Shown: piece by piece, positions 1,106-1,924 of the stretch
Position numbering within the stretch: position 1 is the stretch's first letter
Layout: every line of letters starts with the position of its first letter
Translations under genes and position numbers: made by a program
The notes under the pieces: model-generated
Told to the model about the DNA's origin: nothing
Databases searched by the model: none
What the model saw: only the letters and a program-made list of their open reading frames with translations
Assembly (NCBI RefSeq): GCF_001194135.2
Contig: NC_069001.1
Span: 3,849,784 to 3,913,393 of the forward strand
Origin: Octopus bimaculoides
Lineage: Eukaryota
Direction: 5' to 3'
DNA length: 63,610 nucleotides

Positions 1106-1718
1106 ATCATCATCATCACCATTTGACATCCAGTTTTTTATAGCCTTGTAAGCAGGTTTGGTAGACAGAAACTGAAAGAAGCCCGTCATATATATATGGC
1201 TGGTTTCAATGCTAAAGGCTTAAATATTCTCTCAAAGACCACCACACTTCTGCCTTTTATAATCACCTGGGTCAGCCAGGCTGTTTGGTGTTGAATCAGC
1301 TCCGCTGGCCACAGCATTCACTCACTCCATTCTCCTCATGCCATGGAGGAGAATGGCCTTTTATAATGGAAAAGTAAGAAGTTGTCCATCATGTGCTTGA
1401 CCAATATATAGAATTCTGTGACAGGTGTGGTCACCAAATAACTTGCAAGACAAGAAGCCTCACCTGAGGAGACGTGTGGTATTGGAACAGGTAGCTTTAC
1501 ATCAGGTATGATAGCAAGACAAACTGTTGTACAAAAAAAAAAAGGTGGTGGTGGTGGTGGTGGGGAGGTAAGGACACATTGAATAATGTATTCCCAGATA
1601 CACTGTGTCTAAATAAAAGGTAGCTCAATCATGGTTAGACAGTCTTTTTGGCAATAAATCTACTTAAACTGAGCTGACCTGGGATCACACGACAACAACG
1701 GGTGATAACAACACTTAC

Positions 1719-1840
1719 CTCACTCAAACGGCTTTCAATGAAAGACGGAAATATTTCCCAATAAGATTTTTCAAAGGCGGTTAGTGGTTGATTTGTAAAT
1801 AAGGACGGCTGGTGGTTGATTTGAAAACACAAGGACTTAC
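1719..1840 (-). other. Candidate 122-nt exon beginning with a regenerated 5' splice site (recursive-splice/RS-exon architecture)
   Basis: Minus strand reads tttcttttctcttcttttcctt (22 uninterrupted pyrimidines, 1866-1845) atag|GTAAGT (1840-1835); downstream donor GAG|GTAAGT at 1719/1718. Confidence 0.55.
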
Positions 1841-1924
1841 CTATAAGGAAAAGAAGAGAAAAGAAACTTTAAGTAATAACATTCTGCATAGTTAAGGTTT
1901 TATGTTTAATTATTATTATTATTA

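What the first reader, a model, noticed from the sequence alone, without database searches (positions are those of the whole stretch)
1713..1866. Textbook recursive splice site (AG|GTAAGT) with a downstream RS-exon on the minus strand
Seen: 22 uninterrupted pyrimidines, then ATAG followed immediately by a perfect GTAAGT donor, and 122 nt later a second perfect donor GAG|GTAAGT. Established: this is the ratchet-point/RS-exon layout used for stepwise removal of very long introns in Drosophila and vertebrate neuronal genes, where the two donors compete and exon inclusion often causes a frameshift or PTC. The exon is not a multiple of 3 and has stops in 2 of 3 frames. It is CpG-retaining and carries a 28-nt imperfect internal repeat (aaatcaaccacYaRccg). 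Inference: recursive splicing may operate in long cephalopod introns, which I do not know to have been described. Alternative: an ordinary phase 1->0 coding exon (GKSLCFQINHQ...RLSE) that happens to start with GTAAGT.
Basis: partly seen in the sequence, partly recalled or inferred. Interest (0 to 1): 0.75.

Follow-up and report, generated by a model that had tools for sequence, protein, structure and literature searches.

The report
Putative recursive-splice exon in octopus DNA
The sequence has a very strong intron-end signal joined directly to a perfect intron-start signal, with a second perfect intron-start 122 bases later, which chance rarely produces, but nothing available here shows that the strand is transcribed or that either signal is used.

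Summary
On the minus strand, 22 pyrimidines (1866..1845) and ATAG are followed directly by GTAAGT (1840..1835). A second donor, GAG|GTAAGT, lies 122 nt downstream, and a 28-nt internal repeat is present.

The fused acceptor/donor scores 23.0 bits. The next best in the window scores 13.9, and 0 of 300 shuffles reach 23.0. It is the strongest acceptor on its strand.

The rival "ordinary coding exon" is disfavoured. The only open frame has no real relative among 5.8 billion or 1.84 billion proteins, although octopus proteins are in the database. 41% of random 122-mers from this window also have an open frame.

No coding exon, host gene, transcript or orthologue could be found with these tools. 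Strand use, intron length, conservation and donor choice are therefore untested.

The downstream donor is as strong as any regenerated donor could be, and 122 nt is long for a cryptic ratchet exon. I expect partial or full inclusion rather than clean zero-length removal.

Best reading: a splice-competent, non-coding exon-like unit that meets the sequence definition of a putative RS-exon. It would be a new member of a known kind, it is unproven, and its interest is modest.

The parts
1845..1866 (-). 22-nt uninterrupted polypyrimidine tract (UCUU/CUCUU-rich)
   Evidence: It belongs to the best-scoring acceptor on the minus strand (15.7 bits).
1841..1844 (-). ATAG, the 3' splice-site YAG; the AG is at 1842-1841
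   Evidence: There is no AG between -27 and -3, so the AG-free zone spans the Y tract.
1835..1840 (-). GTAAGT directly after the AG. This is the candidate recursive (regenerated) 5' splice site and also the first 6 nt of the exon-like unit
   Evidence: The intronic half scores 8.6 bits and the composite score is 23.0 bits, reached by 0 of 300 shuffles.
1719..1840 (-). 122-nt exon-like unit (candidate RS-exon). It shifts the frame, has stops in 2 of 3 frames, and is unique within the window
   Evidence: No protein relative was found.
1778..1823 (-). Two copies of the A/C-rich motif CAAATCAACCACYARCCG (1823..1806 and 1795..1778), 28 nt apart. Because 28 is not a multiple of 3, the peptide is not repeated
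   Evidence: 0 expected by chance, families D2 and D4.
1712..1721 (-). Second donor G-AG|GTAAGT-G, with GT at 1718-1717 (11.6 bits, 8/9 consensus)
1867..1894 (-). Branch-point region. The only yUnAy match is TTAAC (A at 1892, position -52), but AGs lie between it and the acceptor. A degenerate CTTAA at about -30 is positioned better
   Evidence: The branch-point assignment is an inference.
1464..1523 (-). Second exon-like unit, 60 nt, lying 195 nt downstream (T11-containing acceptor at 9.2 bits; donor CAG|GTGAGG at 12.8 bits)
   Evidence: When the two units are joined in the open frame, a stop follows after 8 codons.
1147..1197 (.). Arm of an inverted SINE-like repeat pair that flanks the unit (partner at 2274-2324)
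   Evidence: pair I1 (51 nt, 84% complementary, 1076 nt apart).
2274..2324 (.). Other arm of the inverted SINE-like pair
   Evidence: pair I1.

Best explanation
This is a splice-competent, non-protein-coding exon-like unit on the minus strand of an octopus-type genome. By sequence it qualifies as a putative RS-exon in the sense of Blazquez et al. 2018: an exon whose first bases regenerate a 5' splice site once it is joined to the preceding exon.

Proposed mechanism, all inferred:
1. If the minus strand is transcribed, the 22-nt pyrimidine tract with AG at 1841 and the GAG|GTAAGT donor at 1718 define a 122-nt exon across their two strong sites. The duplicated A/C-rich motif may help this definition.
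2. The upstream exon is spliced to 1840, creating NNN|GTAAGT.
3. This regenerated donor competes with the identical GTAAGT at 1718 for the next acceptor.

The downstream donor is already 8/9 consensus, and 122 nt is an ordinary exon size. I therefore expect mixed use or predominant inclusion, as a non-coding, UTR, alternative or poison exon, rather than obligatory zero-length removal. Recursive removal would be the minor or regulated outcome.

What is shown: the sequence layout, its rarity in the window, and the absence of coding evidence. What is not shown: transcription, splicing and donor choice.
For: - The layout is exact.
- 1840 is the best acceptor on the strand, at 15.7 bits.
- The composite acceptor|donor score is 23.0 bits against 13.9 for the runner-up, and 0 of 300 dinucleotide shuffles reach it.
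- An independent estimate agrees. About 10 acceptors of 14 bits or more per window, times a probability of about 3e-4 for GTAAGT, gives about 3e-3 per window.
- A donor of 11.6 bits or more falling within 40-300 nt has about a 1-2% chance.
- Four of the 13 strong minus-strand donors lie in 688-1840 (scan-statistic p = 0.016).
- A second exon-like unit follows 195 nt downstream.
- The segment is single-copy in the window and less folded than shuffles (z = +2.35).
- Non-coding status: no shared words in 5.8 billion proteins; only a spurious tandem-repeat hit in 1.84 billion representatives; the neighbouring frames are also empty; octopus proteins are present in the database.
- Donor-competition and size arguments come from PMC8605326 and PMC6224609.
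Against: - There is no evidence of any transcript or host gene. Pfam found nothing in the 150 longest non-repeat stop-free segments of either strand.
- No orthologue was available, so conservation is unknown.
- The splice-site matrices are generic, human-like values recalled from memory, not trained on octopus.
- The shuffle null ignores transposon families. The 1-kb unique segment could be a repeat elsewhere in the genome.
- The donor at 688 has no usable acceptor, so part of the donor cluster may be chance.
- The database's coverage of octopus proteins is demonstrated by only one UniRef entry.
Confidence: 0.42

Rival explanations
1. One reading: a cryptic ratchet point inside a long minus-strand intron. 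The 122-nt RS-exon is defined only transiently. The regenerated donor at 1840 is then used, so the exon never appears in mRNA and the long intron is removed in two steps.
For: - All sequence-level criteria are met and rare.
- The exon shifts the frame and is rich in stops, as described for cryptic RS-exons (PMC8605326).
- At least 61.7 kb upstream on the minus strand holds no recognisable coding exon, which is compatible with a very long intron.
- The exon is absent from every protein set.
Against: - The host gene and intron are unknown, and the same emptiness fits intergenic DNA.
- The RS-exon donor (GAG|GTAAGT, 11.6 bits) is about as strong as any regenerated donor can be, whereas cryptic RS-exons usually have the weaker donor.
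- The exon is 122 nt, against about 50 nt or under 100 nt for fly cryptic RS-exons.
- No second RS-like site exists in 63 kb.
- There are no conservation or RNA data.
Confidence: 0.25
2. A chance pseudo-exon. The motifs arose by drift next to a pyrimidine-rich tract in untranscribed or antisense DNA, or were carried in by a low-copy transposon, and are never used.
For: - The genome is full of pyrimidine runs: 27 runs of 18 nt or more on this strand of the window alone.
- Extrapolating the per-window probability (3e-3 or less) to a genome of about 2.7 Gb gives on the order of 100 chance AG|GTAAGT sites with strong tracts.
- No transcript, gene or coding evidence was found.
- 41% of random 122-mers have an open frame.
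- SINE-like copies flank the segment.
Against: - The full layout, with a second near-perfect donor at exon distance, has an estimated chance of about 3e-5 per window, or about one per genome.
- Strong same-strand donors are clustered locally (p = 0.016).
- A second exon-like unit lies 195 nt downstream.
- CpG is retained.
- The internal motif is duplicated.
Confidence: 0.22
3. An ordinary protein-coding exon, phase 1 to 0, encoding ...KSLCFQINHQ...SRLSE, that merely happens to start with GTAAGT.
For: One frame is open across all 122 nt and the splice sites are strong. In human, 1.7-4.9% of annotated exons regenerate a 5' splice site, so such exons are not exotic (PMC6224609).
Against: - No protein among 5.8 billion shares even three 5-mers with the peptide.
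- HMMER against 1.84 billion representatives gives only a spurious repeat hit.
- Octopus bimaculoides UniRef entries are in the database.
- An open frame is expected in 41% of random 122-mers.
- The 28-nt repeat is out of register with codons.
- Joining to the next exon-like unit stops after 8 codons.
- There is no Pfam domain.
Confidence: 0.05
4. The 1840 site is an ordinary donor, not an acceptor. A first, non-coding exon would start near a TATA-like box (about 1972-1966) and the palindrome at 1956..1939. GTAAGT at 1840 and 1718 would then be tandem alternative donors or U1 sites downstream of a promoter.
For: Strong same-strand donors cluster at 1840, 1718, 1463 and 688. No usable acceptor lies upstream of 1840 within about 450 nt. 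A CpG-retaining palindrome GCCGTCA-TTAT-TGACGGC and a TATTTATATA sequence lie 100-130 nt upstream.
Against: This leaves the perfect 22-nt tract plus YAG directly abutting the donor as coincidence. TATA-like strings are common in DNA that is 62% A+T. There is no CpG-island-like peak here and no transcript evidence.
Confidence: 0.06

Closest known systems
Drosophila intronic ratchet points with cryptic RS-exons (Ubx, kuz, Bx; Burnette 2005, Duff 2015, Joseph 2018/2021; PMC8605326, bioRxiv 10.1101/006163)
   Same: Both have a fused acceptor|donor with a long pyrimidine tract and GTAAGT. Both have a downstream donor that allows exon definition. In both, the exon content shifts the frame, carries stops and has no coding relatives.
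   Different: Fly cryptic RS-exons are about 50 nt, and the regenerated donor is usually the stronger one. Here the exon is 122 nt and the downstream donor is near-maximal. The fly sites lie in known long introns and are ultraconserved. Neither point is known here.
Vertebrate RS-exons in long neuronal genes (Sibley et al. 2015, as summarised in PMC5126111 and PMC6224609)
   Same: Both have a YAG|GT junction, an RS-exon with premature stops, competition between two donors, and inclusion predicted to trigger mRNA decay.
   Different: The vertebrate sites were defined by saw-tooth RNA-seq and junction reads in very long introns of identified genes. No RNA evidence or gene exists here.
Annotated (expressed) RS-exons kept in mRNA by the exon junction complex (Blazquez et al. 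2018, PMC6224609)
   Same: Both are normal-sized exons with strong sites whose first bases regenerate a 5' splice site. This best fits the 122-nt size and the strong downstream donor.
   Different: Those exons are annotated, mostly constitutive and coding. This unit has no coding signal and no annotation evidence.
[quoted passage not shown]
   Same: It is a single intronic unit that can either be included, giving a stop and decay, or be resplices away. That is the mixed outcome I predict here.
   Different: That case was shown experimentally in a known gene. This one is a sequence prediction only.

Membership tests
Recursive splice site / ratchet point | A 3' splice site fused directly to a 5' splice site: (Y)n-N-YAG|GTAAGT | tested here: met
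   The sequence is Y22-ATAG|GTAAGT at 1866..1835. The composite score of 23.0 bits is the best in the window by 9 bits, and 0 of 300 shuffles reach it.
Recursive splice site / ratchet point | Lies inside a long intron of a gene transcribed from the same strand | not testable with these tools
   No gene or coding exon was detectable on either strand (Pfam on 300 segments; protein searches). No genome annotation or RNA data were reachable.
Recursive splice site / ratchet point | A downstream 5' splice site that allows the RS-exon to be defined | tested here: met
   GAG|GTAAGT lies 122 nt downstream and scores 11.6 bits, the 4th best donor on the strand.
Recursive splice site / ratchet point (cryptic class) | The regenerated donor is stronger than the RS-exon donor, and the RS-exon is short (about 50 nt, under 100 nt) | tested here: inconclusive
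   The intronic halves are identical (GTAAGT). The outcome depends on the unknown last 3 nt of the upstream exon, and the most the regenerated site can gain is the -3 position. The exon is 122 nt, longer than the fly norm.
Recursive splice site / ratchet point | The AG|GT junction is conserved across species while the exon body is poorly conserved | not testable with these tools
   No orthologous locus was obtainable. The metagenome scan was empty, and the exact-protein look-ups and protein searches were empty.
Recursive splice site / ratchet point | RNA evidence: upstream-exon|RS junction reads, saw-tooth intron coverage, lariats from the RS donor | not testable with these tools
Putative RS-exon (Blazquez definition: an exon that regenerates a 5' splice site at the preceding junction) | The exon begins with a sequence that forms a strong 5' splice site after joining | tested here: met
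   The exon starts with GTAAGT. This row holds only if the unit is a real exon, which is not shown.
Ordinary protein-coding exon | An open frame with detectable protein relatives or a domain | tested here: not met
   The frame is open but there are no relatives and no Pfam hit. 41% of random 122-mers are also open.
Interspersed repeat / transposon fragment | Multiple copies | tested here: inconclusive
   Positions 1203-2252 are single-copy within the 63.6-kb window. The rest of the genome could not be searched.
Structured non-coding RNA | A stable or conserved fold, or an Rfam match | tested here: not met
   There are no Rfam matches and no tRNA genes. The fold is weaker than shuffles, z = +2.35.

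The most novel reading that the evidence does not exclude
The site is a working ratchet point with an RS-exon in a very long octopus intron. That would be the first recursive splice site documented in a mollusc or any lophotrochozoan. It would have an unusually long RS-exon, two equal donors and a duplicated A/C-rich element that tunes the choice between zero-length removal and poison-exon inclusion.
Probability: 0.25. Interest if true: 0.55.

Novelty: new member of a known kind. Interest (0 to 1): 0.3.

Why it matters
Recursive splicing is documented in flies and vertebrates. It is thought to help remove very long introns and to act as a quality switch in neuronal genes.

Cephalopods have large genomes with long introns and elaborate RNA processing in the nervous system. 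No paper in the searchable library reports recursive splicing in an octopus, cephalopod or mollusc.

A validated site would extend the mechanism to the third major bilaterian branch. It would also offer a model with two equally strong competing donors.

Because flies and vertebrates already bracket this lineage, its presence in cephalopods would be expected rather than surprising. One unvalidated motif match does not establish it.

Tried and rejected
- **Coding exon.** I searched the 40-aa open frame against 5.8 billion proteins and found no shared words. HMMER against 1.84 billion representatives gave one hit, P0001. It is an 8 x 70-aa tandem-repeat protein that matches a 13-residue stretch eight times, so I rejected it as spurious.
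- **Neighbouring frames.** A 544-aa concatenate of stop-free segments from 624-3944, including the frames of the downstream exon-like units, gave nothing at E <= 0.01.
- **Host gene.** Pfam on the 150 longest non-repeat, non-low-complexity stop-free segments of each strand found 0 families. Exons under about 110 nt and repeat-masked segments were not covered.
- **Orthologous or same-locus contigs.** Exact look-ups of four window ORFs and of P0003 found nothing on record. A 21-mer across the junction had 0 matches in JGI metagenomes.
- **Repeat or transposon.** Self-BLAST shows the segment is unique in the window. TRF does not report the 28-nt repeat at its thresholds, but pattern search and the repeat finder do.
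- **Structured RNA.** Rfam found none, ARAGORN found none, and the fold is weaker than shuffles.
- **SINE orientation.** I looked for an orientation bias as a clue to the transcribed strand. The split is about 6 against 8, which is uninformative.
- **Larger concatenated query.** I considered a six-frame concatenate of 8-17 thousand residues for the word-indexed search. I dropped it because chance 5-mer sharing would flood the candidate step.

Full report
**1. The observation**

Everything here is read on the minus strand. Positions 1866..1845 are 22 uninterrupted pyrimidines (TTTCTTTTCTCTTCTTTTCCTT). Positions 1844..1841 are ATAG and 1840..1835 are GTAAGT. A second site, GAG|GTAAGT, has its GT at 1718-1717, so the interval 1840..1719 is 122 nt.

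Frames 0 and 1 of that interval carry stops, one of them the TAA inside GTAAGT. Frame 2 is open.

The internal repeat is real. CAAATCAACCACYARCCG occurs at 1823..1806 and 1795..1778, 28 nt apart, and nowhere else in the window. No match is expected from 100 shuffles (family D4).

CpG observed/expected is 0.92 in the exon against 0.33 for the window. The surrounding 200 nt rank in the top 5% of windows.

**2. Is it more than chance?**

The whole window, both strands, holds three AGGTAAGT, and two of them are these.

I scored sites with generic splice-site weight matrices. The frequencies are human-like values from my own memory, not trained on octopus, so the bit values are approximate.
- 1840 is the best acceptor on the minus strand, at 15.7 bits.
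- 1718 is its fourth-best donor, at 11.6 bits.
- The combined acceptor plus intronic-donor score at 1840 is 23.0 bits. The next best AG|GT in the window scores 13.9.
- In 300 dinucleotide-preserving shuffles, the best score on either strand averaged 15.0 (sd 1.9) and never exceeded 22.0.

Shuffling destroys the many real pyrimidine runs, of which there are 27 of 18 nt or more on this strand. I therefore made an independent estimate from the real sequence. About 10 acceptors of 14 bits or more per window, times about 3e-4 for GTAAGT, gives about 3e-3 per window, which agrees.

A donor of 11.6 bits or more within 40-300 nt adds a factor of about 0.01-0.02.

Extrapolated to a genome of about 2.7 Gb (size from my own knowledge), chance should give on the order of 100 fused motifs but only about one complete layout. 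The layout is therefore unlikely to be chance, unless it rides on a repeat family that this null ignores.

**3. Surroundings**

The window is 62% A+T, poor in CpG, full of microsatellites and SINE-like copies, and interrupted by 13 N gaps.

A LINE tail at 63340-63561 (minus strand) is 87% identical to UniRef A0A0L8I0U5 of Octopus bimaculoides. The DNA is therefore octopus-like, and octopus proteins are present in the search database.

The segment 1203-2252 is single-copy within the window. It is bracketed by two SINE-like copies in inverted orientation, with arms at 1147-1197 and 2274-2324 that are 84% complementary.

A second exon-like unit lies 195 nt downstream of the 1718 donor, at 1523..1464 (60 nt). 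Its acceptor contains a T11 run and scores 9.2 bits. Its donor, CAG|GTGAGG, scores 12.8 bits.

Four of the 13 minus-strand donors of 10 bits or more lie at 1840, 1718, 1463 and 688 (scan-statistic p = 0.016). The 688 donor has no usable acceptor upstream.

The RNA around the unit folds less stably than shuffles (z = +2.35). There is no Rfam match and no tRNA gene.

**4. Coding or not**

The open frame carries no weight, because 41% of real 122-mers from this strand have one.
- The 40-aa peptide shares fewer than three 5-mers with every one of 5.8 billion proteins.
- HMMER against 1.84 billion representatives returned only P0001. This is an 8 x 70-aa tandem-repeat protein matched eight times over 13 residues, which is spurious.
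- A concatenate of the neighbouring stop-free frames, including those of the two downstream exon-like units, found nothing.
- The 28-nt repeat is out of register with codons.
- Joining the two exon-like units in the open frame stops after 8 codons.

An ordinary conserved coding exon is therefore unlikely. A lineage-specific, UTR, lncRNA or poison exon is not excluded.

**5. Host gene, transcript, conservation**

None could be obtained.
- Pfam on the 150 longest non-repeat stop-free segments of each strand gave zero families.
- Exact-protein look-ups found nothing.
- A junction 21-mer is absent from the metagenome collection.

The 61.7 kb upstream on the minus strand may be one long intron or may be intergenic. 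The tools cannot tell which.

**6. Mechanism**

If the minus strand is transcribed, two sites of this strength at exon distance should be recognised by exon definition. The upstream exon would be joined to 1840, regenerating NNN|GTAAGT.

According to the fly and mammalian work, the outcome then depends on three things: competition between the regenerated donor and the RS-exon donor, exonic elements, and the exon junction complex (PMC8605326; PMC6224609).

Here the intronic halves of the two donors are identical and the downstream one has GAG in the exon. The regenerated site can be better only at position -3.

Cryptic fly RS-exons are about 50 nt and usually have the weaker donor. Most fly RS sites have the next donor less than 100 nt away.

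The 122-nt size and the strong donor look more like an expressed RS-exon or a normal cassette exon. I therefore predict inclusion or mixed use, with recursive removal as a regulated or minor path.

Inclusion would shift any coding frame, since 122 mod 3 = 2, and would introduce stops in two of the three phases.

The duplicated A/C-rich motif resembles A/C-rich exonic enhancers. This is from my memory only and was not tested.

**7. Comparison and novelty**

The unit meets the sequence definition of a putative RS-exon, a class that makes up 1.7-4.9% of annotated human exons. It also meets the motif definition of a ratchet point.

Membership in the functional class needs four things: a same-strand long intron, conservation of the junction, RNA intermediates, and the donor hierarchy. 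Three of these were untestable and one was inconclusive.

No paper in the searchable library links recursive splicing with octopus, cephalopods or molluscs beyond incidental mentions. A validated site would be a first for the lineage, but it would be a new member of a known kind.

**8. Verdict**

The interpretation can be neither confirmed nor refuted here.

My weighting:
- 0.42: a splice-competent non-coding exon that is a putative RS-exon, with mixed or inclusive outcome.
- 0.25: a true cryptic ratchet point.
- 0.22: an unused pseudo-exon or repeat-borne motif.
- 0.05: an ordinary coding exon.
- 0.06: a first-exon donor or U1-site cluster.

Interest is 0.3.

Noticed in passing
window 1147-1197 and 2274-2324: Two SINE-like copies in inverted orientation bracket the exon-like unit (51-nt arms, 84% complementary, 1076 nt apart). 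If transcribed, such a pair could form a double-stranded RNA stem around the exon. In other animals that arrangement favours back-splicing (circular RNA) and A-to-I editing.
   Followed up: partly
window 2253-2400, 16443-16581, 18411-18550, 21881-22020, 33747-33864, 35500-35604, 46604-46708, 53208-53327, 53398-53505, 56104-56198 and others: An interspersed family of about 140 nt, SINE-like and often headed by a (TA)n or (CA)n run, has at least 15 copies at 72-86% identity in both orientations. About 24% of the window has a similar copy elsewhere in the window. ARAGORN and Rfam do not recognise a tRNA-like head.
   Followed up: partly
window 63297-63610 (minus strand): This is the frameshifted tail of a LINE-type element (…IPIIVGALG…LLGTAHILRKTL…). 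It is 87% identical over 39 aa to UniRef A0A0L8I0U5 of Octopus bimaculoides and runs off the window end.
   Followed up: partly
window 688-1840 (minus strand): Four of the strand's 13 strong 5' splice-site matches cluster here (1840, 1718, 1463, 688; scan-statistic p = 0.016). A 60-nt exon-like unit lies at 1523..1464. This could mark a small multi-exon non-coding transcript or U1-site enrichment near a start site.
   Followed up: partly
window 1939-1956 and 1747-1758 (minus strand): Two perfect palindromes lie close to the unit. GCCGTCA-TTAT-TGACGGC sits about 100 nt upstream of the acceptor, with inverted TGACG half-sites and 2 CpG, 10-15 nt downstream of TATTTATATA. GGAAATATTTCC sits inside the exon-like unit. 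Either could be a protein-binding site.
   Followed up: no
window 4216-4545: A 138-nt tandem repeat has 2.4 copies at 92% identity. It translates as long Thr/Val runs on the two strands, which produces the longest artefactual ORFs in this part of the window.
   Followed up: no
window 14481-14780, 22041-22380, 48401-48640, 51001-51260: These are the most CpG-dense 200-nt windows, with 9-11 CpG against a mean of 2.1. They could be young repeat insertions or unmethylated regulatory DNA.
   Followed up: no
window 56500-57300 (minus strand): This is a dense block of long polypyrimidine and (TC)n runs, including (AG)51 at 57196-57298 on the plus strand. It accounts for much of the strand's excess of pyrimidine runs (27 against 9 runs of 18 nt or more).
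   Followed up: no
window 6193-6311, 12450-12724, 13921-14239, 15681-16231, 17554-18410, 18776-18785, 19454-20234, 25624-25915, 32476-32690, 34311-35049, 38433-38579, 50592-50999, 54835-54951: Thirteen assembly gaps total 4,830 N. Small exons or repeats hidden in them would have been missed by every analysis here.
   Followed up: no
protein P0001 (database hit, not in the window): This 541-aa database protein is made of eight near-identical 70-aa units, probably a translated satellite. It reaches E = 8.6e-10 against a 40-aa query only by summing eight 13-residue matches. It shows how repeat proteins can inflate HMMER E-values.
   Followed up: yes
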